A DNA stretch of 63,529 bases, counting the filler, from Salisapilia sapeloensis CBS 127946 (lineage: Eukaryota > Protista > Oomycota): NCBI GenBank assembly GCA_023334545.1. It is 8 parts of 8 records of this genome, joined end to end, with 100 filler letters (N's around TTAATTAATTAA, not from the genome) between each part and the next. Parts side by side here need not be neighbours in the genome. Positions count along the whole stretch, not along the records: positions 1 to 12,927 come from JAADVB010000402.1; 7 more parts are not named here. One strand, written 5' to 3'. Under the pieces are notes generated by a model that saw only the letters and a list, made by a program, of their open reading frames with translations, made no database searches and was not told the DNA's origin. Position 1 is the stretch's first letter. The number at the start of each line of letters is the position of its first letter. A program made the translations under genes and the position numbers. Shown here one piece after another: positions 1 to 12,927 of this stretch.

Positions 1-291
1 CGCGTGTAGAAAGTTGGGATCGTTTGAGCAGTAGGCGGCAGATCGCACAATGAGCTTCGTTGGGCGGACTGGTTCGGTCGGTGGGTCATGTAGCATCTTC
101 GCGTTGGACATTGCGAAGAAAAGCATGATGCATGATGCATGATGCATGGATCATGACAACGCCGTCGGTAGACTGGTCGCTATACATGATGGATGGAGAG
201 ACTCGAAAAAACATAGAGACAGCGATTCTTTGGCAAGACCATGTAGAAGTATCCAGACATGAGAACTGTATTAATAACACTTTCCGATCGT

Positions 292-1120
292 CTACGAAGC
301 TGTTCGATTCGTATCTTGTACCCACGCCATAAAGTCATCAATCAACACTGGCCAGGCTTCGTTCTCGTCGTACTTGTCATATCCTGTTTGAACTTTAAAG
401 AGGAAATCAATTAGTAGATTCCACGTGTCCTTGGTCACTCCTTTCGTCGGGTTCTGGTCTTTTAAAAACTCGAGCCAGTGCTTTCCCACGACCGGAAATC
501 GAGGCGGCAGCAATAGCTCCCACATCCCAGATGCCATTTCAATGCCCACACTCTTTTGGCCAGGGTCTTTTGAAAAAGTAAAGCAAAAGGCATAAAACTT
601 TTTAAATTGATCGTCACTTGCAATGGACGCCTCGAGTTCCGAAATTTTCGATGCAAGTGATGCCATCGAGTCACATCGAAGACGTTTCATGCCTGTAAGG
701 AACTCGGACCGAGTGAAAACACCCATGTACCCTGCTTCCATGAACCACGCGAGGATCACGATGGTGATATCTTGTGGATCCAAGTTGGCGTCTTCACAAA
801 ATTTTAGCACACCATCTTCATTAATCGTGTCTTCGTCATCCGGATCGGCGTACTCGTCGAACCATTTATTCACGGCCTCTTCAAAACCCTTGGGAAGTGG
901 CTCTACTTGCTCTCCGCCATTGCCATCGGCGAAATAGGAGTCAATGGCTATTTCGAGATTCCACCCACAGTCTCGAAGATACCCTTCCGCCACCGACTTC
1001 CTATCAATTCAGAGGACATATCATCAGGGCATTCCTATAGTCTAATTACGTAGTAAAAAGGTACTTGGCATTCGTAGTACGGACGAAATGGCTGATCTTA
1101 TCGTGTCGACGGCCAGACAT
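292..1120 (-). CDS. DCN1: DCN1-like protein (defective in cullin neddylation 1; UBA-like + PONY domain), 2 exons (1120-1065, 1000-292)
   Basis: GWNLEIAIDSYF UBA-like motif; FYAFCFTFSK..QKS, KGVTKDTWNLLIDF and YDENEAWPVLIDDF are PONY-domain motifs. A 64-nt GT..AG intron (1064-1001) joins MSGRRHDKISHFVRTTNAK in frame to KSVAEGYL. Confidence 0.93.
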
Positions 1121-1230: not shown

Positions 1231-3006
1231 ATGCAGGCGGAGATGATTCCGTCATCCTTGTCAACTTCGACTTCATTTTCCAATTCGATCGCTCAAGACG
1301 AGATGGCAGACTTACTACAAGCAGTTGCAAGCGGAAAGACATCGTCTAATGATCAGCAAGATCATGGTAAAGCTGTGGGCATCTCGAATGCCCAAGCGGA
1401 ACTCTTAAAGGAGCATGCAGTGTCCTGGGCGGCTGCCCACGGCCTGCTGGTTGGTGCCAAGGATGGCAATGCATCCGCTACCTTTACGCACATCCCTTTC
1501 TGTCTACTCCCAGTCCAGGTATATGGCAATACGACGAGTGTATTGTATAATTGGCTAAAGGAATCTATACAAGTAGCTTTCAAAGGCACAATTCGAACGT
1601 GGAGTGGAGCTATCGCCATTGTATGGACGACTAATGGACCGCGTTAGTCGTGACCTAGACTGGCTGCACAGCACTGTGGAATCGTAGGCTTCTACAACTC
1701 GTTCAACTCTTGACTAGGTATTAATATTGGATGAGAGTAGTGTTGTGGCAGAAGACAAATTCACTGGTCGATTGCTCGAACTGTCCAAGAAGGTAGCAGA
1801 AGAAGGTATCCAGCAAAAGGCGTACTTGGGCATCCACCGGTCGGACTATATGCTGCATGACCCACCAAAGGACGTATCTAGCAACCAAGAGCAGCGTCTG
1901 CTCCAAGTAGAACTCAACACCATCTCGGCTTCCTTTGCTTCTATCAGTTCCAAGGTGACGGATCTGCACAAGTACGAACCTTTCATATCCATCCCGCTCT
2001 ATTGTATCTTATAATAGTTCTCAGGTACCTGATCAACCGTCTCGGAACGGAAATTCCAGACTTGTCGTCGAACTATGGCATCTCAGCAACCGACTTGGGC
2101 GGTTGCCTGCCGTCCAACGACGCAATCATCAACCTCCCGAAAGGATTCGCGGCTGCCCACCACCACTACAACAATCCTTCCGCGATTATTCTAATGGTCG
2201 TTCAGCCAAATGAAGCTAATTCGATTGATCAGCGCTGGATCGAGTACAACCTATGGGACCACCATCATATTCGTGTCCTCCGTCGAACGCTTACTGAAAT
2301 CCACGCAATGGCGGCGCTAAAGAACGTTGATGGAAAGCGCAAGCTCTTTATCGACGGCAAAGAAGTCAGTGTCGTCTACTTCCGCTCAGGGTACACACCT
2401 GAAGACCATCCGACCGAGGTCGAGTGGGAAGCCAGGGAGCTCCTGGAACGCTCGTACGCGATCAAGTGCCCTTCGGTCGCCTACCACCTCGCTGGTACGA
2501 AGAAGGTACAGCAGACACTTGCGGATCCGAGTGTCCTCCGTCGCTTCATCTCGAACGAAGAGGACGCCAAGACGATTGAAGCGTCTTTTGCTGGGCTTTA
2601 CGGTCTTGAACAAAAGTCTGTCGAGACGGAAAAGATTAAGCAAATGGCCGTGTCCAACCCCAAGGGCTATGTGCTGAAACCTCAGCGCGAAGGTGGTGGA
2701 AACAACTTGTATGGACAAGAAGTCTCGAAAGCGATGCAGGACATGAGCCCAAGTGAACTCGAGTCGTATATCTTGATGGAGCGCATTTTCCCAAAAGAGA
2801 TGTCCGCTGTGTTGGTGAGATCGAATACGATGGCGAGTGGTCCGACGATTAGTGAACTTGGGATGTTCATCACGACTCTGTTTGACGACGGAGAGGAAGT
2901 GATGAATGCACATGCTGGACATTTGCTCCGGACGAAGTTGTCGGAAGTCGATGAAGGAGGCGTCGCGACTGGATTCTCCGTCATTAGCAGTCCTCTACTT
3001 GTATAA
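1231..3006 (+). CDS. GSS: Eukaryotic glutathione synthetase, 4 exons (introns about 1519-1576, 1684-1740, 1972-2024)
   Basis: LGIHRSDYM, QVELNTISASF, VYFRSGY, YHLAGTKKVQQ, VLKPQREGGGNN, YILMERI, SELG and GHLLRTK..EGGVATG motifs. Three GT-AG introns join the ORF fragments in frame. Confidence 0.96.
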
Positions 3007-3047
3007 GCTTGAATAAAAAACCGACTGAAGCTGTTTATATTTTTATC

Positions 3048-3719
3048 ATGAACGTCCTATCTGTCGTATATGATGCCGATAGCGATCGATTTGTCCTGGC
3101 AGAAGATGGCGGAGGAGTACGATGGCAGGGAGAGATGATCCATCCGCAAATAGACTTGACATCGTCTAGCAGAAGCATGATCCAACCGGATGAAGTGCAT
3201 GTCAAGACTGCTCTTGCCGGTATGTCTGGCGTCTGGACGGATGCTCGTGACTTGCAACGTATTGGAGATAGCGGAGACGCATACCTACCGTCAGAAGTAA
3301 ACATTGGATGTCGATTTATAGCATGCAAAGGTCTTTCACCATCTCTCGAGACAGAAGAGTATAACATTGGAGACCGCGTCTTTGTGTGGCACGACAGTCG
3401 CTGGCGTCCTGGTAGAGTACTAGCGAGACGCATCCACAACTACGACATCTTACACTCTAGTAAGGATATTGTACTTCATGACATCCTTCCAGTTTACCTC
3501 CGACCTCGAGACAAGATAAAGCACGAGAAACCTGCGAGTCCTTTAGCTGTTGGCGATCGAGTCACGTGGACACCTGTAGACTACTGCTCTCTCACATGCA
3601 ACGACCAAAAGACATACACTGGACGCATCCTGCACATCTCTTATACGCGTCGACTAGCTACCATCCAACTAATGTCCTATCAAATACTCCAAGTGTCCAC
3701 AACTCAGCTCCAGAAGTGA
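3048..3719 (+). CDS. Hypothetical protein with two putative Tudor/Agenet/KOW-like beta-barrels
   Basis: Open 223-codon frame from ATG 3048. It contains YNIGDRVFVWHDSRWRPGRV and LAVGDRVTWTP..YTGRILHI segments typical of SH3-like barrels. Confidence 0.55.
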   Translation: MNVLSVVYDADSDRFVLAEDGGGVRWQGEMIHPQIDLTSSSRSMIQPDEVHVKTALAGMSGVWTDARDLQRIGDSGDAYLPSEVNIGCRFIACKGLSPSLETEEYNIGDRVFVWHDSRWRPGRVLARRIHNYDILHSSKDIVLHDILPVYLRPRDKIKHEKPASPLAVGDRVTWTPVDYCSLTCNDQKTYTGRILHISYTRRLATIQLMSYQILQVSTTQLQK

Positions 3720-3739: not shown

Positions 3740-4460
3740 CTATTTGGTCTTGTTCTTCTTAGTCGATCCAGGTCCTTTCACCTTTTGCTTCTTGCTCGTA
3801 CGCTGCTGAGTAGTTGGCTCACCACCAAAGGCGTTGGTGATCGTGTCGCTCCACTGACTCCACTGCTTGGCCGTGTCGACGGACGGATCACGCCACGGAC
3901 GCTTCAGATCTCCCCATGCCTTTTCACCTTGGATCGTCACTCGCATGAGAGGCGACTGGAGCAAGTTGTATGGCTGGGTCACGGCCTGGACGAGGAGGGG
4001 CGGGAAGAACTGCCATTTCCAGTGGACGAAGATTGTGATGAGCGTCGTCAGGGCGAACTTTTGGATGTCACCTTTGGCTGCACGCATGTCATGCTCTGCA
4101 ACGGTGATCTTCTCCTCTGCTTCACCTTCCTGACCAAAGCCAATGTCCTCCTTGACAGTCAAGACACCAGCCTCCGTGTTGTTCTACTCCAGCGATCAAT
4201 ACGATTCACACATATAAGTGGAGCAATTACATAGACATACTCTGGATTGAATGTACGCATAGATCAGCATGCCATAGCAAGCGACTTGAGACAGTGCGTA
4301 GAAAACTCGAATGCCAAGGATGTGCCCTAGGATAACGGATGAGGTTCTGAAGTCATACATTCGAATATGGAAACATACAAGGGTCCTCCGTATCAAGAAA
4401 GGTCTTGGCACCAATGGCAAGGCTCATTGTGAGCACCATCATCTTCCACGTGCGCGCCAT
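3740..4460 (-). CDS. PHO88: PHO88/SND3-family ER membrane protein, 3 exons
   Basis: The C-terminal exon has HWKWQFFPPLLVQAVTQPYNLLQSPL..GDLKRPW. Upstream exons (MARTWKMMVLTMSLAIGAKTFLDTEDP; YALSQVACYGMLIYAYIQSR) are bounded by GT-AG introns. Confidence 0.8.
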
Positions 4461-4826: not shown

Positions 4827-6727
4827 CTAGATTGCGCATAATCCAATTATCCATGTCGGCCGGTGTGTGAACGCTCGATGGATCGTATGTACTTTGAACG
4901 GGTAATATATTCGCTGCAAGAACCAGTCCAAAACATCAAGGTACCCTCTCTCACAAGCAGTCAGCAGTGGTCTACGTGTATGTACTGAAACCCCTTGCTC
5001 GAAGAGCCATCGTGCGAGTTTGAAGGGACCATTTCGGATCGATGCTTCCATGCATTCGTTCTCGTCGTCAATGGTAGAATTCTTAAAGGACCACTTGACC
5101 ACCTCTAAGCGACCATCCCAACTCGCTTGTCTTGGCCCATCCGATACTACTTCCTCCCCTAGATGAATATGGAGCCAAGAGACAGTCTCTTTATGACCAC
5201 CGTACGCAGCTCCAGTCCCTCGCTTCGACTATGAATACGGTGCAGTCTCGACTCTGCAGCCATTGCAGAATGTAAAGATGATTGTTCTCTGCTGCGACCT
5301 CGATGCCGTTTTTCGTCGGCAAGACATATCCTTTCGAGATCAGCTTCTGCAATAGGTCTGCTTTTCCATCTCTACAGCCTCGTCAATCGCCTTCGTTGAG
5401 CACATGTTCACTTTAACCTTTCAAACAGCTTACTCGTCTATAAGAACTGTAAGACGTCAATGTGTCCTTCCGTGACAGGAACATCCATCAAAAATGCCAT
5501 CACGGAACCTGTTGGCTGTCCACATGCTTGCAAAGTAGCTTTAGTACTTTCAAATGACCGTTGGTAGTTAACTTTGCCAAGGAACTCGCGCTCAAAGGAT
5601 TGGCACGCTGTGTGTACAGGCACTGGAGGACCTTGTAGTGGCCGGCGAACGAAGCTGCTTCCAAAGTGTGAACAAGGCACCACTCGGTGACAATGTTCTG
5701 GATCAAGTACTGTAAGCAGGCCCAGTGTCCATTCCTGGCGGCTGCGAGGCAAATATTTCTCGATGTTGACTTGTAGCCTCTGGCCCCAAGCCACTCGATA
5801 ATTTCTACCTAATTAGTTGTGGCAGCAGCGGCGTATAGATCCAGCATTTCTTCACGCCAGTCGACATCTTCTCCATACGGAATGACATTGTGTACATACT
5901 GGAGCACATCGAGGTGACCAGCTACAGCAGCATTCGCGATAATTTTACTTAATCCCAAGTGCTCATTTAATATCTCCTTTTTCAGGAGGTCAAGATGGCC
6001 ATACTTGATCATGATATCCTTTGTGTCCATCGTGTACGGATGGCTTGGACCAATGTACTCTCCATGCGGGGCTCTTTCACCATAATATCCTATCGCATTC
6101 CGCTTTTCCAGTAATCTGGTTCCTCATTTTGTCTTGACGATATATTCTACGCGACTGCGTTTGCCAATCTCCTGACTGTAGGGCCACTCTAGTGTGTATC
6201 TGTGGTTCCATACAATGGCAACTACGATGCACTCATAGCATACATGCCAATGAGGAACGAGCTGTCGGACACACTGGAGCATGTCATTCTTTCCTTCCTC
6301 ACTGACAACAATTGTGAGCACGCACCATTGATTGTAAAGCGGTGGCTCAGACCGATCTCGCTGCAACTGCTGTACAATATACCAGCACGATAGTTGAGCA
6401 GCATTGTTTAGTTCACCCGCTGCCCAGTCAATTGTATAATCCTCTAGCAATTCCGTGACATGTGGAAGTCCTTCCAAACTAACAATGCTACAAGTGAGCA
6501 CAACGATGGTTGTTAAGTGGTTTACTCGTTCAGTTAGATTGCACATCTTGATAGAGTCGTATGCACCGGGTGAAAGCTAAAGTGAAGAGCGTAGGCAGAG
6601 GGTCCAGAAACCACGGCATATATGATTGATAACTCTGATGGAGTGGATGATGTTCATTAGTCAAGATGTTCAAGGTCAGCTGGGTACAAGATGCTACTTC
6701 GTCATGTACAACTAGATTGATCGCCAT
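4827..6727 (-). pseudogene. Decayed oomycete-type ankyrin-repeat gene
   Basis: Ankyrin-like motifs are spread across different frames: LPHVTELL, NAAVAGHLDVLQYVH, AASFAGHYKVLQCLY, AAENNHLYILQWL, AAYGGHKETVSWL, ACERGYLDVLDWF. They are separated by stops and frameshifts without usable splice sites. Confidence 0.75.
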
Positions 6728-7172
6728 ATTCTACGTTTATCTGCTGTAATTTGTAATTATCGATAAGTGGACTTTGTATCGATTTAAAATGCATTCCTCA
6801 ACTTCCTCGTTCCAAGTGACCATTCCAACAGAATACGCTTTTACAAGTTGTTCTGCTATAATTAGCTCAAAAGAGGTTGATGGATGTGATTGCCTGTATA
6901 AAGTATAAGGATAGCATCATGCTTCCGGCCCGTTCGTATATTTGTTGCTACTCTGAACGGATCATATAATCGACAGTCAACTATCGACTCGGATGCCGGT
7001 GTATGTAAACTATGTTTATCACCAGGACTGACTTGCATAATGGCTCAATCCATTTCGAAACAAGCATGGAAACCCAGCACAGCAACATGCCAATTCTACA
7101 TAAAGCAATGGGTCAGACATCGCTGACTGCTCATTTTATACAGCGGCCCATAAATTTGCATTTCATTTGCAC

Positions 7173-9181
7173 TCAGTTATCTACTACACTTCCATCCTTC
7201 AGCATTCTGCGCAGTTCAAAAGAGATTTGCACTGCCGTCGGCCGCTCTCTTGGTTCGAAATTCAGACACTTGTCTACGAGATCCCGCATCTCCTGTGGGC
7301 AGTCCTCGGAGACACTTGGCTTGATCATGCGACAAGCAACACGATGCAGAAGTGCATAGTCCGGAAGGATTTTGCCTTCTTGGTCCACGGCATCATGTAA
7401 AGGCAGCTCGTTCGTATCCAACTCGGTCAAAATAGCTCCAAACGAGTACGAATCGCAAGTGTGGTCATAAGACTCGCCAGCTACCACTTCAGGTGCAAGC
7501 CACTACATTACAGAAAAAGTATTCATTAGTAAATAAATTAATAAAAAGGATAAGATTGCGACACATACCCGAGCAGTTCCAACGGCTTGAGTGGTCATGG
7601 TATTGTTATCCGACATGAGCCGAGCGGAGCCAAAGTCACTCACTTTCGCAATCATCTCTTCTGATAGCAGAACGTTCCGAGACTTGAGGTCACGATGGAC
7701 AATCGGTCGTTCGAAAGACTGAACATACACAAGTGCTTCGGCAATATCAATAGCGATGCTAAGCTTTTCCTTGGTCCAATGTCGAGGCACGTTCGGGCGC
7801 TGTAGATACTCTCGCAAGTCACCATTCGGCATGTATGTGAATAGCGCTTGGAAGTTCGATCGCATCGTCCACGCCACACCGATGCAGTCGACAATGTTCG
7901 CATGCTCGATCCTTGCAACTAGCTTTACTTCATCGACAAACGTTTCAAAAGCCGACGGATCAGCGACATTACGTGCTAATCTTTTTGATGCGTAGTAGTT
8001 ATCGTAGTACGACACTAACCAGACGACTCCGAACGCGCCAGAGCCGAGGATCTTGATGTCCTGAATATCTGTGTAATTCAATTTTCTCTCCACAAGCTCT
8101 CTGTCGCTCCAGATATCATAGACACCGGCGTCATTAGACGGACTTTGGGCGTGAGATAAAGGCTGAAGCTGAGATAAAGACAGATATGGAGCTGAAGGCA
8201 GAGGTTGTGCAAGGGGTACAGCGTGAGCTTCTGTTTCGGCCTCTGTCGTCGCTGTCGTCGCTGTCCCTGTTTCAGGAACGCGATTCGCTTCATGTCGTCG
8301 GTATGCATCCTCGGCGTATGCTTCGGCCATAGCAGACTTGCGTTGATGCATACACCACATCCACATAGCACCAGCAATGACAGCAAAAATAGCGAGTGGA
8401 AGGACGATGGCGAGTACGTTCGGACCATCGGCGCTTTCATGATATAAAGCAGGCGCGTGGCCTCCTTGAGATGATCCGTCCGAATCATCGAACGAGCGCC
8501 ATGAAGAGTGGCTGTCAAGTCCTGGTAGAGTGAACAATGAATCATCCTTTGATGCCTTCGAGTCGTCAGAAAATGTCCGTGACATGCTACTTGCCTCACT
8601 CATTGCAATAGCTGACGCCGCAGCAGTGGTTAGATCAGCAAGTGATGAAGCCTCTGGTATCTGCAACTCTTTAGGTGTAGCAGGTGCAACTGCTTGGAGT
8701 ACTCGGTGCTCATTCAAATTGCTTGACACGGACCCGTGAGTCGGAAATATTAAGTCGTGCCAGTTTCCTACATATACAAACAGATTAGCTCTTTTATACG
8801 CATACACAAGAGGAGTAAAGTCGTATAGCTACCTTCCAATCCTGCCAAGGTTGAAGCATTTCCATTGCCAGCGTCTTCTTGACACAAGTGCTCGAAGGCG
8901 TGATAGAGTTCCTTTAAATTAACGTATCCGAATGATTCGGAAGGAAAAGCGCATTCTGGGAGTCCTTTATATAGTGTCTGGTAAATTTCAACGCATGAGT
9001 CCGTGCAGTCATAGGCTAAGGTTTCCATGTCCACGCATTCAGTGTTCGATTGGAATTTGTTTACTTCTGCTTGCATTTCGGTCAATTTATTCCCCTCTTC
9101 CTCTGTACATTTTTCACTTTGCACGATTTGTCGGAAATGCGTGCTGATGAGCATCATGAGGAGGATGGTTGGTCGATACAT
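7173..9181 (-). CDS. Receptor-like TKL kinase with N-terminal signal peptide, elicitin-like 6-Cys ectodomain, Ser-rich stalk, TM helix and intact kinase; 3 exons (9181-8833, 8767-7569, 7502-7173), 625 aa
   Basis: Intron 8832-8768 (65 nt, phase 1) joins ..AGLE-G to NWHDL..; intron 7568-7503 (66 nt) gives GTAR-WLAPE. Kinase motifs GSGAFG, ASK, HRDLKSRN and DFG are intact. TM helix is VLAIVLPLAIFAVIAGAMWMW. An INR/FPR-like motif lies at 9222-9237. Confidence 0.8.
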
Positions 9182-11087
9182 GAGGCTATAGTCTTCCAAT
9201 GTGCTGATGTGAGTACTCAGGAGAAATTGAAAGTGTGCGCTATGTGAAACACTAACGAGAGACCACAAATCTGACAGTCGAAATGTGGCGGTCACACTGG
9301 AGATATTCACAAGAATTGTTACAACCGTACGTATATATCTTGATTTCCACCAATCTCTGTACTGGGAGTAAAATCCATCTCTTGTATCCACTCATTTCCT
9401 CTCAGCTGTCTTCGTCGGCTCGCCGAAGGAAATGCATGATGCCACAAATTTTGCAGCGGTTTCCTTTTGATACTTGAACTCATTGAGACTTTTCCGCAAT
9501 GTATGGCGGGACAATAAAGAAATGTACACATATAAAGGGATACCAGTATCAACTCTTGAATTACCTTTGCGTAAATGGAGACTAGGAAGCGATGTAGTAG
9601 CACATAATGAAGCGAGCGGGGCCATTGACTAGCACCTTGCCCTATGCACAGACGCTACGAAAATTTGTGGCTGTGAGGAGTGCCCTGCTCAGCGTAAAAG
9701 CTACGCTTCGTGTTGAATTGCTGCGAGATAAAGACCTTTTAGAGCATATAGAAACCTTCACCGTCAAGCTAGCTGCATTATACTTCATTCTTACCGACGA
9801 TTGCATTTAATTATGCATTAATCTACTTGTGAGTATGTGTGTGGAAATACACGAGGGATCTAGTAACCAAATTTTAGATCAGGAAAGTTGCTCGTAGCAT
9901 TTCAATTTTACCAGTTGGCTGTTAGCGATAGATAGTACAAGTCATCGGAGCTTTGGACTGTCTGCCAAACTGTCGATCGCATGCTTTGAAAATATCCTTG
10001 TAGCCATACAAGGCATCTGGGGAATTCAATTTGCCATGACAATTTACTGCTTTTACCTTCGTCCTCTACCAGCATATCCCGTCAGCTAGCTTCGGCCCAC
10101 TACTTTCATGATAACTCGAAGCTACTTGCTCTTGCGGTTTTGGCTATCATAATACTTCAATGGTGTGTTTTAAATGAAGACCCGCGATTTCGTACTATAT
10201 GCCAAAGCATGCCAAAGCTGAGTCGTCCGGTTCTCCCTAGTCGATTATCATTGACAGTTGTCACCTTCCTTACTCTGCCATCCTCTATCCTGTGTCTCTC
10301 ATGGAAATTCAAGGTTACCACAAATCGTCTTATAAGCTTACATTTCTAGTGCCGATCTTTTGACCTTCCAATCCCAACAGTTTCGTGTTAATTTACCTGA
10401 AGAATCGGAAATCGCACACACACGATCGCCGAATGAAGTGCTTGTCGTTCAAAAAACTTTGATGTGTAGTGTGAGAGAGATAATGCTTTATATGGGTCTG
10501 ATGAAAATCAAACAGATTAACAAACAAATGAAACTTGTAGTCATGAATGAGACTATATCGACAAAGCCATCAAGCGAGAGCGACAAAAAAGACTTGAGAG
10601 CAAACATCGTGGTGCATACAGCGACAAAGCTCTCAATTCCCAACACGAGTCTCGTCTGTCATGCATTGACCACAACTACGATCGACTCGAAGCAAAGCTG
10701 ACAGGTGAATCACCCAGGAAGCTTTGGGATACTATTTGCCAAAGAAAATCATGCATTTAACCGACTACATACCAACAGCATTGCTACCAACAAAACCGCT
10801 AATGAGCACTACCTTATCTTGAATCCTCCTCCAGTACCGTTCTAATGCATGGAAGCCACATTGAGCCTTTCAGTCGAAATCAAATAGTATAAGCCCCACA
10901 AGTAAGCAACAGGGCAAGTCTCATATAGTAGTCTCTTCAAAATAATAAAACATTCTTTATGCATTATGATGTTTTATTTGCATGCTTTTTTAAAGTCTAT
11001 ATTCTGCATGCAATCGATCTGTACATGTCAAGTATGCATTGTATTCATCTCACCTGTCGTGGTCTGTATCGTATTGAACTACATTGT

Positions 11088-12128
11088 CTACACAAGGTCG
11101 TCCTTGGCTTCGGCGTTCGTTGTTGTTACACTATCCGTATCCTCCTCTTCTTCTTCCGCTTTCTCCTCCTTCTGCTCTTCCTCTGCTAGTTTCAAAAGGT
11201 GCTGTCGAGTCAAGTACCCCATGACTGCCAGTAACGACAGAGCGCTGACAGCTCCCACCATGAGCACGACAATCTCCGTCGTATGATCTCGTCCGCCTTC
11301 CGATAGCAATACTGTCAAATGTTGCGCAGCGTGTCCAGAGTACACCCAAATGGAGCTATACACGAGTCCGGTGACAAGTGCAGCAAAGAAAAAGACAAAG
11401 AACGAAACATCTAGGACACTCAGTCCGTAGTTTTTAATGGCAATGGGGAAAAAAGCCACGCGTGTGAGGCATACGACCAGAATCTGTCTGCGTCGAACGG
11501 CGTGTTGGAGAGCTTTCAGGACAGGATGACCTTGCGTCAAGTACGCTGCGACTCGATCTCGACAGGCATACCGGCCAATAAAGAACGAAATGAGTGACCC
11601 GCTCAGCTTGCCGACAGTCGTTAAGATCAGTCCGAGCCAAAAGCCAAACATGTACCCAGCCAAGACCTCGAAAAGCGTCGAGGGAAAGCTGATTAGGGAA
11701 TACATTAGACAAGTCGTTTGGATCGTAGCAAGAGATCGTACCAGAGGATGATCGAGAGTGTGAATGTACTCGTGAAGATCGTCGAGCCTGCGACTTTATG
11801 TTCCTATCCGTAACCGTTAGGTATAGGACGTGTAGGTAAGTAGATCAATAAATACCTTGAGCCATGTGATCACGTTGTAAAAGTCGTCACTTTTGACGAA
11901 ATGGCTGATCAGAGCTACGGAAGCTGCGATGGTAGTTACAACAATAACGCCAACGATTGCTCGTTTCATGCTGCAAAGACCTCTCGTGCCGTTCATGGCA
12001 TTTAGCTCTGGCAAATCATTGCCTATTGGCTGTTTGGCACTGTACAGAGCGGGTTCTGACTCCAGATGGGCGACCTCAGCTGCCGTGCCCGTGGGGGACG
12101 TGACCACTGGAGAATACTGCCGCAGCAT
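11088..12128 (-). CDS. VTT-domain (TVP38/TMEM64, SNARE-associated Golgi / DedA family) membrane protein, 3 exons
   Basis: FPSTLFEVLAGYMFGFWLG, GSLISFFIGRY, LTRVAFFPIAIKNYGLS motifs. The upstream exons MLRQYSP..ITWLK and EHKVAGS..IILC join through GT-AG introns. Confidence 0.88.
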
Positions 12129-12927
12129 CCGGAGGAGCGGGCTATCCGAGTCGCGATTCGGACGTTTCTGTTCGCGTCCAAGTGGGAACGCAAAGTGAGC
12201 TCGCATGTGGGACGGCGCAGTGATTTTTTCCTTCGATTTGCTGTACGTACCGCCTCTTTTTCTGTTAGAAACGACATAGAGCGGCAAAAAGTAGCGAAAT
12301 GGCCAATGAAAGTAGCGGGTAAATTTGAAAGGCTTTGGTTTTGTTTGCTGCTGTAAAACACGAATCGTAGCATTGAATAGTACGAGTATCGCTGCATGGG
12401 GAGGATACGCGTCATGGAGCTTGTGGTAGGTCGGTTGTGGTCCGAAACTTTCAATAGTTCGACGGTTTTGTAAAATCAAATTAATATTCAACGAAATGCG
12501 CTGGTGGTGGATGATGCAGTGCAGAGCTTCATGTCGGTTGCGTGTACCTTGCAAGGACACGTCAGAGCTACACAATAGTGCTTTATCACGGGATGGCCAA
12601 TTCTAAAGCTAAATTATCTTCGAGAGTTTCTATCGAAAAGAAATGCAAAAGGATGAATTGTCCGATCACTACTTGAAATAAAGCGTCGAAGAGCACAGTC
12701 TTGTTCATAGTCCAATTTTCTTTTCAGTATCTTTAACGCAGGTGCCTGAAAGAGCAATTCAGGTCATCACAATCTTGTTCTACAGCGTACTCAGTGACGT
12801 GTCCGAGTTTCCACTCATCCCAGTCCTTTTTTGCCTTTGAAGCTTGAAGTCAAGTACCGACGTCGACTTGTTTGATCTTGCCTTTCGATACACTCAAAAC
12901 TACGACACGGTAGCCCAAGCTCGTCGA

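What the first reader, a model, noticed from the sequence alone, without database searches (positions are those of the whole stretch)
7173..9181. Elicitin-domain receptor kinase: a candidate one-protein sterol/lipid sensor
Seen in sequence: the ORF track splits this locus into 8768-9391, 7503-8807 and 7173-7487, but two canonical short introns (8832-8768, 65 nt; 7568-7503, 66 nt) join them in frame into 625 aa. The order is a signal-peptide-like N-terminus, a six-Cys domain spaced C-23-C-9-C-3-C-13-C-22-C with LPEC, an Ala/Ser-rich stalk, one TM helix, and a TKL kinase with all catalytic motifs. Established knowledge: elicitins and elicitin-like (ELL) proteins are oomycete six-Cys domains. True elicitins bind sterols and fatty acids, and they usually occur secreted or surface-anchored, not on kinases. 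From memory (verify), a Phytophthora receptor kinase, SSRK1, was reported to sense sterol in partnership with free elicitins. Inference: this gene may be a Rosetta-stone fusion of the ligand-binding module and the signalling kinase. The short C2-C3 loop (9 aa) is ELL-like, so sterol binding is not guaranteed.
Basis: partly seen in the sequence, partly recalled or inferred. Interest (0 to 1): 0.8.

Follow-up and report, generated by a model that had tools for sequence, protein, structure and literature searches.

The report
Receptor kinase with elicitin-like ectodomain
This is a real, expressed three-exon oomycete-type gene for a membrane receptor kinase whose small six-cysteine outer domain probably has the elicitin fold; that domain combination sits in databases but is undiscussed in the papers searched, and a sterol-sensing role is unproven and rather unlikely.

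Summary
On the minus strand, ATG 9181 to stop 7173 gives 625 aa in three exons. Transcript contigs from three RNA runs remove both predicted introns exactly (8768-8832, 7503-7568), and the DNA run keeps them.

The protein has a signal peptide, a six-Cys domain (C-23-C-9-C-3-C-13-C-22-C), a Ser/Ala-rich stalk, one TM helix and a TKL kinase with all catalytic motifs. The kinase falls in the oomycete receptor-kinase clade that also holds LRR receptor kinases.

The elicitin call is only partly supported.
- Against: no Pfam Elicitin match and no credible sequence homologue among 1.84 billion cluster representatives. Two ESM Atlas shape searches and one of two Foldseek-free PDB searches did not recover elicitins.
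- For: a low-confidence AlphaFold model of the mature domain matches cinnamomin and cryptogein best (TM 0.55). Cryptogein and sylvaticin rank 1 and 2 of 48,161 chains (Z 6.6, 5.3).

Related kinases from Pythium porphyrae (Pfam-significant), P. insidiosum and Aphanomyces euteiches carry similar six-Cys ectodomains, so the architecture already exists in databases. No paper I could search describes it.

Direct sterol sensing is doubtful. The C2-C3 segment is 9 residues against 23 in cryptogein, and a tested elicitin-like protein barely binds sterol.

The parts
7152..9297 (-). Assembled mRNA extent (about 2.0 kb after splicing)
   Evidence: One RNA contig in each of X2, X3 and X5 spans 7152-9297 with both introns removed
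9182..9297 (-). 5' leader of 116 nt with no ATG
8833..9181 (-). Exon 1 coding part (residues 1-116 plus the first base of codon 117)
9116..9181 (-). Signal-peptide-like N-terminus (residues 1-22; R3, hydrophobic core TILLMMLIST, VQS before the likely cut)
   Evidence: Sequence inspection of the translation. No signal-peptide predictor was available.
8867..9115 (-). Six-Cys ectodomain (residues 23-105), candidate divergent elicitin-like fold
   Evidence: Cys spacing; fold matches to elicitins; no Pfam hit
8768..8832 (-). Intron 1, 65 nt, GT..AG, phase 1
   Evidence: Skipped in all three RNA contigs, kept in the DNA contigs
7569..8767 (-). Exon 2 (residues 117-516)
8421..8866 (-). Ser/Ala/Asp-rich extracellular stalk (residues 106-232, spans intron 1) with one N-x-S sequon at residue 108
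   Evidence: Composition S 17%, A 13%
8346..8420 (-). Single transmembrane helix (residues 233-257), followed by HQRK
   Evidence: Kyte-Doolittle maximum of 2.54 at residue 234
8061..8345 (-). Cytoplasmic juxtamembrane region (residues 258-352), including the WSD..L motif also present in P0038
7218..8060 (-). TKL protein kinase domain (residues 353-611, spans intron 2) with all catalytic motifs
   Evidence: Pfam PF07714 8e-28 and 7e-11, PF00069 7e-26 and 6e-14 on the two pieces; motifs; clade placement
7503..7568 (-). Intron 2, 66 nt, GT..AG, phase 0, between kinase subdomains VII and VIII
7173..7502 (-). Exon 3 coding part (residues 517-625 plus the TGA stop)

Best explanation
The locus is one transcribed, correctly spliced gene for a type-I single-pass receptor-like Ser/Thr (TKL) kinase of an oomycete or oomycete-like organism.

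Shown: the gene structure and its transcript. The protein has a signal peptide, an 80-residue six-Cys domain, a probably glycosylated Ser/Ala-rich stalk, one TM helix and a kinase with all catalytic motifs. The kinase lies in the oomycete receptor-kinase clade that also holds LRR receptor kinases.

Inferred, about two chances in three: the six-Cys domain is a highly diverged, compact elicitin-like (ELL) domain. It keeps the elicitin cysteine framework (mature positions 3 and 27, then C-3-C-13-C-22-C) and the helix/beta-hairpin/helix C-terminal half, but lacks most of the C2-C3 segment.

Inferred mechanism: the ectodomain binds an extracellular ligand or partner, this brings kinase domains together, and trans-phosphorylation starts signalling. 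Because the omega-loop segment is missing, I think the ectodomain more likely acts as a partner- or ligand-binding module than as a stand-alone sterol sensor with a cryptogein-type cavity. One possibility is contact with an LRR receptor kinase, since most P. sojae elicitin-family proteins contact the SSRK1 ectodomain.
For: Gene model and expression.

Kinase: Pfam and motifs. The best homologues are oomycete TKL receptor kinases, at 52-57% identity. WIN lies inside a clade of 41 Pythium, Phytophthora and Globisporangium kinases (99% SH-aLRT) that includes five Pfam-flagged LRR receptor kinases plus P0038 and P0054.

Elicitin-like ectodomain:
- The Cys spacing matches the elicitin pattern at four of five gaps.
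- The predicted secondary structure is helix, helix, beta-hairpin right after Cys5, then a helix carrying Cys6.
- Foldseek against PDB puts cryptogein first for model 1. For model 2 it puts cinnamomin, cryptogein and cryptogein-cholesterol at ranks 1-3 (TM 0.56/0.55 for the first two).
- A Foldseek-free VIA-align search of 48,161 chains puts cryptogein (Z 6.6, 82 residues end to end) and sylvaticin (Z 5.3) at ranks 1 and 2, above a plateau at Z 4.3.
- AFDB hits include Elicitin and Elicitin-like clusters and P. oligandrum Elicitin-like protein 2 at rank 1.
- In the protein-language-model search, Elicitin clusters are the best named family.

Precedent:
- P0038 (Pythium porphyrae) has a Pfam-significant Elicitin domain, a TM helix and a kinase of the same clade.
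- P0054 and P0080/P0122 have six-Cys elicitin-pattern ectodomains with sub-threshold Pfam Elicitin hits.

Against a sterol cavity: the ELL SOL7 has a KD of 513 uM and a sealed cavity, and sterol does not enhance ELL-SSRK1 binding. Even so, 43 of the elicitin-family proteins tested in P. sojae (a family of 59) interact with the SSRK1 ectodomain.
Against: No Pfam Elicitin match, even at E<=10. phmmer against 1.84 billion representatives found only a spurious bacterial repeat protein. Pairwise BLAST to the P0038 and P0054 ectodomains is insignificant, and MAFFT cannot align them.

Both structure models are single-sequence and low confidence (pLDDT 63 and 61). All Foldseek E-values are near 1 or above. 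Z 6.6 is below the level the tool's own note calls safe. The ESM Atlas shape search found no elicitin with either model. The wide VIA search with the model that includes the signal peptide had no elicitin in its top 50. AlphaFold may simply recall the elicitin fold from the Cys pattern.

No data here bear on ligand, partner or disulfide connectivity.
Confidence: 0.6

Rival explanations
1. One reading: a one-protein sterol or lipid sensor. The elicitin-type ectodomain itself binds sterol or fatty acid, and ligand binding directly activates the fused kinase. This would be a Rosetta-stone fusion of the SSRK1 plus elicitin pair.
For: The same architecture and fold evidence as above. Elicitins and a receptor kinase do cooperate in sterol sensing in P. 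sojae. By Cys-anchored comparison with cryptogein recalled from memory (not tool-tested), the hairpin Gly and the Tyr corresponding to Tyr87 are kept.
Against: The C2-C3 segment is 9 residues against 23 in canonical elicitins. From memory, in cryptogein that segment carries the omega loop and Tyr47, which form the cavity mouth. The only ELL assayed (SOL7) binds sitosterol with a KD of 513 uM and has a sealed cavity, and sterol does not promote ELL-SSRK1 contacts. In the same from-memory register, the position of Val84 (V84F abolishes binding) is Lys or Leu. The domain is very acidic and polar.
Confidence: 0.13
2. The ectodomain is an unrelated, lineage-specific small disulfide-rich helical domain. 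Its Cys spacing resembles elicitin by chance, and the gene is simply one more oomycete receptor kinase with an orphan ectodomain.
For: No sequence-level signal of any kind. The models are low confidence. The shape searches in ESM Atlas and the wide VIA search with model 1 were negative. The P. infestans kinome paper shows transmembrane TKLs with short, long and LRR-bearing ectodomains, and one search lists only LRR-type Pfam ectodomain domains apart from P0038.
Against: Both elicitin representatives rank 1 and 2 of 48,161 chains for the mature-domain model. Elicitins top Foldseek for both models. The Cys-gap coincidence has p of about 1e-4. Mature-protein Cys positions 3 and 27 equal those of canonical elicitins. 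A related kinase carries a Pfam-verified elicitin domain at the same position.
Confidence: 0.26
3. Gene-model artefact: two separate genes, a small secreted Cys-rich protein ending at the stop at 8768 and a separate kinase.
For: Unspliced, the exon-1 frame ends at a stop codon at 8768-8770.
Against: Single transcript contigs in three RNA runs bridge both junctions with 255 or more flanking letters. No unspliced RNA contig was recovered.
Confidence: 0.01

Closest known systems
Elicitins and elicitin-like (ELL) proteins of oomycetes (Pfam PF00964; beta-cryptogein 1BEO/1BXM, beta-cinnamomin 1LJP, sylvaticin 2POS)
   Same: An N-terminal signal peptide followed directly by a six-Cys domain of about 80-100 residues. 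Cys sits at mature positions 3 and 27, and the later gaps are 3, 13, 22 against 4, 14, 23. The predicted order is helix, helix, hairpin, helix. These are the best structural matches in PDB for the mature-domain model.
   Different: No HMM or sequence match. The C2-C3 segment is 9 instead of 23 residues, so the omega-loop region is missing. The domain is tethered through a TM helix to a kinase, rather than secreted, wall-linked or GPI-anchored, which are the anchoring modes listed in review PMC8231210.
Oomycete LRR receptor-like kinases, including SSRK1/PsRLK12 of Phytophthora sojae (PMC11551405, PMC8254037)
   Same: Single-pass topology. The kinase domain belongs to the same oomycete-specific transmembrane TKL clade as LRR-bearing members. 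All catalytic motifs are present.
   Different: There are no LRRs. The ectodomain is a small six-Cys domain. SSRK1 itself was not in my alignment, so its exact relation to this kinase is untested.
Pythium porphyrae 'elicitin-like protein' (P0038, 572 aa); probable analogues in Pythium insidiosum (P0054) and Aphanomyces euteiches (P0080/P0122)
   Same: The same order of parts: six-Cys elicitin-pattern domain, low-complexity stalk, TM helix, WSD juxtamembrane motif, TKL kinase. P0038 and P0054 lie in the same kinase clade, and a common clade with the window's kinase is not rejected (AU p 0.60).
   Different: The ectodomains share no detectable sequence similarity with each other or with this one. 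P0038 has the canonical C-23-C-4-C-14-C core and a significant Pfam hit, which the window's protein lacks. The P0080 kinase sits in a separate saprolegnian clade, so the fusion may have arisen more than once.

Membership tests
Elicitin / elicitin-like (PF00964) | Match to the family profile HMM | tested here: not met
   hmmscan against Pfam-A gives no Elicitin hit at E<=1 on exon 1, nor at E<=10 on the mature domain. The controls scored: P0038 2e-10, P0054 0.018, P0080 0.25.
Elicitin / elicitin-like (PF00964) | Six conserved cysteines with elicitin-type spacing (canonical C-23-C-23-C-4-C-14-C-23-C; ELLs vary) | tested here: met
   C-23-C-9-C-3-C-13-C-22-C. Four of five gaps are within 1 residue of canonical, with naive p of 7e-5. 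The C2-C3 gap deviates, which is tolerated in ELLs according to PMC6502433.
Elicitin / elicitin-like (PF00964) | Elicitin fold (helical core plus two-stranded hairpin), with disulfides 1-5, 2-4, 3-6 | tested here: inconclusive
   Mature-domain model: 1LJP and 1BEO at TM 0.55-0.56 and ranks 1-2; 1BXM at Z 6.6 and 2POS at Z 5.3, ranks 1-2 of 48,161. But pLDDT is 61, E-values are about 1, and there were three negative searches. Disulfide connectivity could not be read, because model coordinates are not exposed.
Elicitin / elicitin-like (PF00964) | Secretory signal peptide directly before the domain | tested here: inconclusive
   Judged by eye only: R3, an 11-residue hydrophobic core, and V-Q-S before E23. 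No signal-peptide predictor was available.
Elicitin / elicitin-like (PF00964) | Sterol or fatty-acid binding in a hydrophobic cavity (true elicitins) | not testable with these tools
   Needs a binding assay. The missing C2-C3 segment and the SOL7 data argue against it.
Oomycete transmembrane TKL receptor-like kinases | Protein kinase domain of TKL type with intact catalytic motifs | tested here: met
   PF07714 and PF00069 on both pieces. G-loop, Lys378, HRD, DFG and APE are all present.
Oomycete transmembrane TKL receptor-like kinases | Kinase domain falls in the oomycete-specific receptor-kinase clade | tested here: met
   Inside a 41-member clade with 99% SH-aLRT that includes LRR receptor kinases. 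The window's branch is long (0.9), so its position within the clade is unresolved.
Oomycete transmembrane TKL receptor-like kinases | Single TM helix between the ectodomain and the kinase | tested here: met
   Hydropathy peak at residues 233-257, followed by HQRK.
SSRK1-type sterol-sensing receptor kinase | LRR ectodomain with an elicitin- and sterol-binding LRR6-8 region (Y263) | tested here: not met
   No LRR Pfam hit on the ectodomain. The ectodomain is a six-Cys domain plus stalk. SSRK1 features are from PMC11551405.

The most novel reading that the evidence does not exclude
Elicitin-like ectodomains fused to receptor kinases may form a recurrent, so far undescribed class of oomycete surface receptors (this gene, P. 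porphyrae, P. insidiosum, A. euteiches). In this class the elicitin-family module and the receptor kinase, which cooperate as separate proteins in SSRK1 sterol sensing, are joined in one chain. The fused form would then sense a lipid or sterol directly, or dock constitutively onto an SSRK1-type LRR kinase as a kinase-bearing co-receptor. Either way it would be genetic 'Rosetta-stone' evidence that elicitin-family domains are primarily signalling modules of the pathogen itself.
Probability: 0.2. Interest if true: 0.75.

Novelty: new variant of a known kind. Interest (0 to 1): 0.5.

Why it matters
Elicitins have been studied for 30 years mainly as secreted sterol carriers and plant-immunity triggers. 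Only in 2024 were they shown to feed a receptor kinase (SSRK1) in the pathogen's own sterol sensing. A gene that wires an elicitin-type domain covalently to a kinase of the same receptor clade would independently support that signalling role. It would also give a simple one-gene system to study it, through ectodomain binding assays, a kinase read-out and a knockout. This work further shows that such fusions exist in several oomycete lineages without having been discussed in the kinome papers, the elicitin review or the other papers searched here. If the fold assignment is wrong, the gene is just one more orphan-ectodomain receptor kinase and of local interest only.

Tried and rejected
- Pfam on the ectodomain gave no hit.
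- phmmer of exon 1 against PDB sequences gave only a chance PLA2 hit at E 1.8.
- phmmer of exon 1 against 1.84 billion representatives gave only P0121, a bacterial repeat protein matched through a short NTTEKC..Y..Y motif. I judged it spurious.
- BLASTP of the ectodomain against the P0038 and P0054 ectodomains was insignificant. MAFFT of the four six-Cys ectodomains did not put the cysteines in register, so I did not go on to a profile comparison.
- Word-indexed searches with the P0038 and P0080 ectodomain regions, meant to count further elicitin-kinase fusions, found only the query species. An Atlas search with P0038 found no large cluster combining Elicitin and kinase.
- I considered whether the C-13-C pair here is the LRR C-terminal cap motif common in the related kinases. 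I rejected this because the flanking sequence is unrelated.
- ESM Atlas shape searches were negative with both models. The wide VIA search with the signal-peptide-containing model was also negative.
- The literature searches found no description of an elicitin-kinase fusion: kinome, elicitin domain plus protein kinase, Pythium porphyrae, P. insidiosum, the TMK survey and the elicitin review.
- The source organism could not be named. The best kinase identity is only 52-57%, to Pythium, Globisporangium and Phytophthora. The locus's own ORF did not appear among the hits, and exon 1 found no self-match in the representative library.
Full report
**1. The observation**

- Read from the ATG at 9181, exon 1 (9181-8833, 349 nt) ends at a GT.
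- A 65-nt stretch (8832-8768) ends in AG.
- Exon 2 (8767-7569, 1199 nt) restores the frame through a split GGA codon.
- A 66-nt GT..AG stretch (7568-7503) follows in phase 0.
- Exon 3 (7502-7173) ends in TGA.
- The product is 625 aa.

This is not just a plausible model. Three RNA runs of the same organism (X2, X3, X5) each contain one contig of about 2.0 kb covering 7152-9297. In each, exactly 7503-7568 and 8767/8-8832 are skipped (CT..AC on the + strand, i.e. GT..AG on the gene's strand), with at least 255 letters on the shorter side of each joint. The contigs of DNA run X1 keep both stretches. The 116-nt leader has no ATG, so 9181 is the first start codon. The alternative of 'two genes, one ending at the stop at 8768' is therefore rejected, as far as assembled contigs can show.

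**2. Anatomy of the protein**

- Residues 1-22 look like a signal peptide: R3, TILLMMLIST, then VQS before E23. This is by eye only.
- Residues 23-105 hold six Cys (25, 49, 59, 63, 77, 100), with gaps of 23, 9, 3, 13 and 22, and LPEC before Cys5.
- Residues 106-232 are Ser/Ala/Asp-rich, with one N-A-S sequon.
- Residues 233-257 are the only strongly hydrophobic stretch (Kyte-Doolittle 2.5), followed by HQRK.
- The cytoplasmic part has a WSD..L juxtamembrane motif, then a kinase domain (353-611) with GSGAFGVV, Lys378, HRDLKSRN, DFG and APE.
- Pfam scores PK_Tyr_Ser-Thr and Pkinase on both exon pieces, with profile coordinates that continue across intron 2.

**3. The kinase**

The best homologues of the exon-2 piece are oomycete TKL proteins from Globisporangium, Nothophytophthora, Phytophthora and Pythium. 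They are 54-57% identical over the kinase part, and about 52% over the full domain. Several carry LRR domains.

In a maximum-likelihood tree of 87 kinase domains, the window's kinase lies inside a clade of 41 sequences with 99% SH-aLRT support. That clade holds five Pfam-flagged LRR receptor kinases. Many of its other members keep what looks like the LRR C-terminal cap motif, C-13-C. Saprolegnian kinases form a separate clade. The window's branch is long (0.9), so its exact sister is unresolved. This clade corresponds to the 'oomycete-specific' transmembrane TKL subfamilies of the P. infestans kinome paper (PMC3019232) and to 'clade III' of the transmembrane-kinase survey (PMC10463195). I infer this from their descriptions. 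I did not align their sequences, nor SSRK1 itself.

**4. Is the ectodomain an elicitin domain?**

Sequence methods say nothing.
- Pfam Elicitin gives no hit even at E<=10.
- The PDB sequence search gives only a chance hit.
- phmmer against 1.84 billion cluster representatives returns one spurious bacterial repeat protein.
- So the domain is an orphan at the sequence level, and it fails the profile criterion for PF00964.

Four weaker lines point to elicitin.

(a) Cysteine framework. Recalled from memory, canonical elicitins have Cys at mature positions 3, 27, 51, 56, 71 and 95. This numbering is consistent with the V84 numbering used in PMC11551405. If the signal peptide is cut after S22, the Cys here sit at 3, 27, 37, 41, 55 and 78. 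Four of five gaps agree within one residue. Under a uniform placement null this has p of about 7e-5.

(b) Secondary structure. Both AlphaFold runs predict a long helix after Cys1, a helix carrying Cys3 and Cys4, a beta-hairpin immediately after Cys5, and a helix carrying Cys6. By my memory of the elicitin fold, that is the order in its C-terminal half.

(c) Structure comparison.
- With the 116-aa model (pLDDT 63), Foldseek's first PDB hit is beta-cryptogein. Two more cryptogein entries and sylvaticin are in the top eight.
- Elicitin and Elicitin-like clusters are ranks 3, 5 and 21 in AFDB clusters.
- P. oligandrum Elicitin-like protein 2 is rank 1 in Swiss-Prot models.
- With the mature-domain model (pLDDT 61), ranks 1-3 are cinnamomin, cryptogein and cryptogein-cholesterol, with TM 0.56/0.55 over the whole length for the first two.
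- A search that does not use Foldseek places cryptogein (Z 6.6, model 2-83 on chain -1..98) and sylvaticin (Z 5.3) at ranks 1 and 2 of 48,161 representative chains. Unrelated helical proteins follow at Z 4.3 or less.

(d) Language-model features. Elicitin clusters are the top three hits for exon 1, with scores of 0.74-0.77. They remain the best named family for the mature part alone, at 0.70. By the tool's own calibration these are leads only.

Against this:
- All Foldseek E-values are about 1 or worse, and Z 6.6 is in the range the tool warns about.
- The models are single-sequence and low confidence, and AlphaFold may be recalling the fold from the Cys pattern.
- The ESM Atlas shape search found no elicitin with either model.
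- The wide VIA search with the model that still carries the signal-peptide helix had no elicitin in its top 50.

I put the elicitin-like fold at roughly two in three.

**5. Precedent and prevalence**

Among the 120 kinase homologues listed, one carries Pfam Elicitin together with the kinase families. This is P0038, a 572-aa Pythium porphyrae protein named 'elicitin-like protein' in nr. I confirmed the hit: Elicitin E 1e-9 to 2e-10 at residues 64-138, a TM helix, the same WSD motif and a kinase. Its ectodomain also matches sylvaticin by sequence (E 0.003).

A regular-expression scan for elicitin-type Cys spacing found two more.
- P0054 from Pythium insidiosum: C-18-C-29-C-4-C-14-C-17-C, Pfam Elicitin E 0.018.
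- P0080/P0122 from Aphanomyces euteiches: C-21-C-22-C-4-C-13-C-19-C, Pfam E 0.25.
- Both have a low-complexity stalk and a TM helix before the kinase.

P0038 and P0054 fall in the same kinase clade as the window's gene. Forcing the three together, along with two P. oligandrum kinases, is not rejected (AU p 0.60; that tree is even slightly better). Two long branches are involved, so this shows only that a common origin is possible. P0080 lies in the saprolegnian clade, so either the fusion is old or it arose more than once.

Each ectodomain is itself an orphan in word-indexed searches, which fits fast-evolving surface domains. No large Atlas cluster combines both families.

In the literature I could search, the architecture is not mentioned.
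- The P. infestans kinome paper and the cross-kingdom transmembrane-kinase survey contain no occurrence of 'elicitin'.
- A 2021 review of elicitin anchoring lists secretion, wall linkage and GPI anchors, and contains no occurrence of 'kinase' or 'transmembrane'.
- Other searches gave nothing relevant.

**6. How it probably works**

Shown: an expressed type-I membrane protein with an active-looking kinase of the receptor clade. The rest is inferred.

The default mechanism for such proteins is ligand- or partner-driven approximation of kinase domains, followed by trans-phosphorylation. That proposal is weakened by the 9-residue C2-C3 segment. From memory, in cryptogein the corresponding 23 residues include the omega loop and Tyr47 at the cavity mouth.

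It is also weakened by experimental data in the SSRK1 paper.
- The ELL SOL7 has a sealed cavity and a KD of 513 uM for sitosterol, against 3-5 uM for true elicitins.
- Sterol does not enhance ELL-SSRK1 binding.
- Yet 43 of the elicitin-family proteins tested in P. sojae (a family of 59) contact the SSRK1 ectodomain.

This suggests an alternative. A tethered ELL domain could dock on an LRR receptor kinase and bring a second kinase into the complex. Neither idea is tested here.

**7. Verdict**

- The gene is best filed as a new variant of the oomycete transmembrane TKL receptor kinases, with a candidate, highly diverged elicitin-like ectodomain. It is not a member of Pfam Elicitin, because the profile criterion was tested and not met.
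- The architecture is not unique to this genome, but it appears undescribed.
- Interest is moderate. It rises if the fold and a link to sterol or SSRK1 signalling are shown, and falls to routine if the ectodomain proves unrelated.

**8. Context in the window**

- The neighbours are ordinary housekeeping genes: a DCN1-like protein, glutathione synthase, Pho88 and a VTT/TVP38 membrane protein.
- No second elicitin-like or kinase gene lies in the 12.9 kb.
- No tRNA was found.
- The source organism was not identifiable with the tools. By its kinase it is an oomycete or a close relative that is poorly represented in protein databases.

Noticed in passing
window 4827-6546, minus strand: Several short ORFs in different frames carry ankyrin-like repeat motifs (GYLDVLDWF, GHLKVLKLL, GHIDVLQFL, GHLDVLQYV). 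This may be an intron-split or decayed ankyrin-repeat gene. Pfam gave no hit at E<=0.01 on the two pieces tested.
   Followed up: partly
window 1231-1647 and 2002-3006, plus strand: A eukaryotic glutathione synthase is split over at least two ORFs (PF03917 and PF03199), implying one or more introns between about 1650 and 2000.
   Followed up: partly
window 292-993 (-), 3740-4162 (-), 11088-11705 (-): These are a DCN1-like protein (UBA_4 plus Cullin_binding), a Pho88-family protein and a VTT/TVP38-domain membrane protein. Gene spacing is tight, suggesting a compact genome.
   Followed up: partly
window 8083-8124: Small RNA contigs in X3 (153 nt) and X5 (272 nt) match only this 34-42-nt stretch, with 1-2 differences, and then run on into unlike sequence. 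They may come from a paralogous transcript sharing the juxtamembrane WSD region (tables 7-8).
   Followed up: no
P0002-P0047 (related oomycete kinases): Many homologues annotated with only a kinase domain share a conserved juxtamembrane ectodomain motif (..FL..L..(D/E)...F....C-13-C(V/I)S..) just before the TM helix. This appears to be the C-terminal cap of an LRR ectodomain, and several of these gene models look N-terminally truncated.
   Followed up: partly
window 7152-7172: The assembled transcripts end only 21 nt after the stop codon. Either the 3' UTR is very short or the contigs are truncated.
   Followed up: no
window 3009-3719 (+) and 11817-12575 (-): Two long ORFs (236 and 252 aa) have no Pfam family at E<=0.01. 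Whether they are coding is unknown.
   Followed up: no
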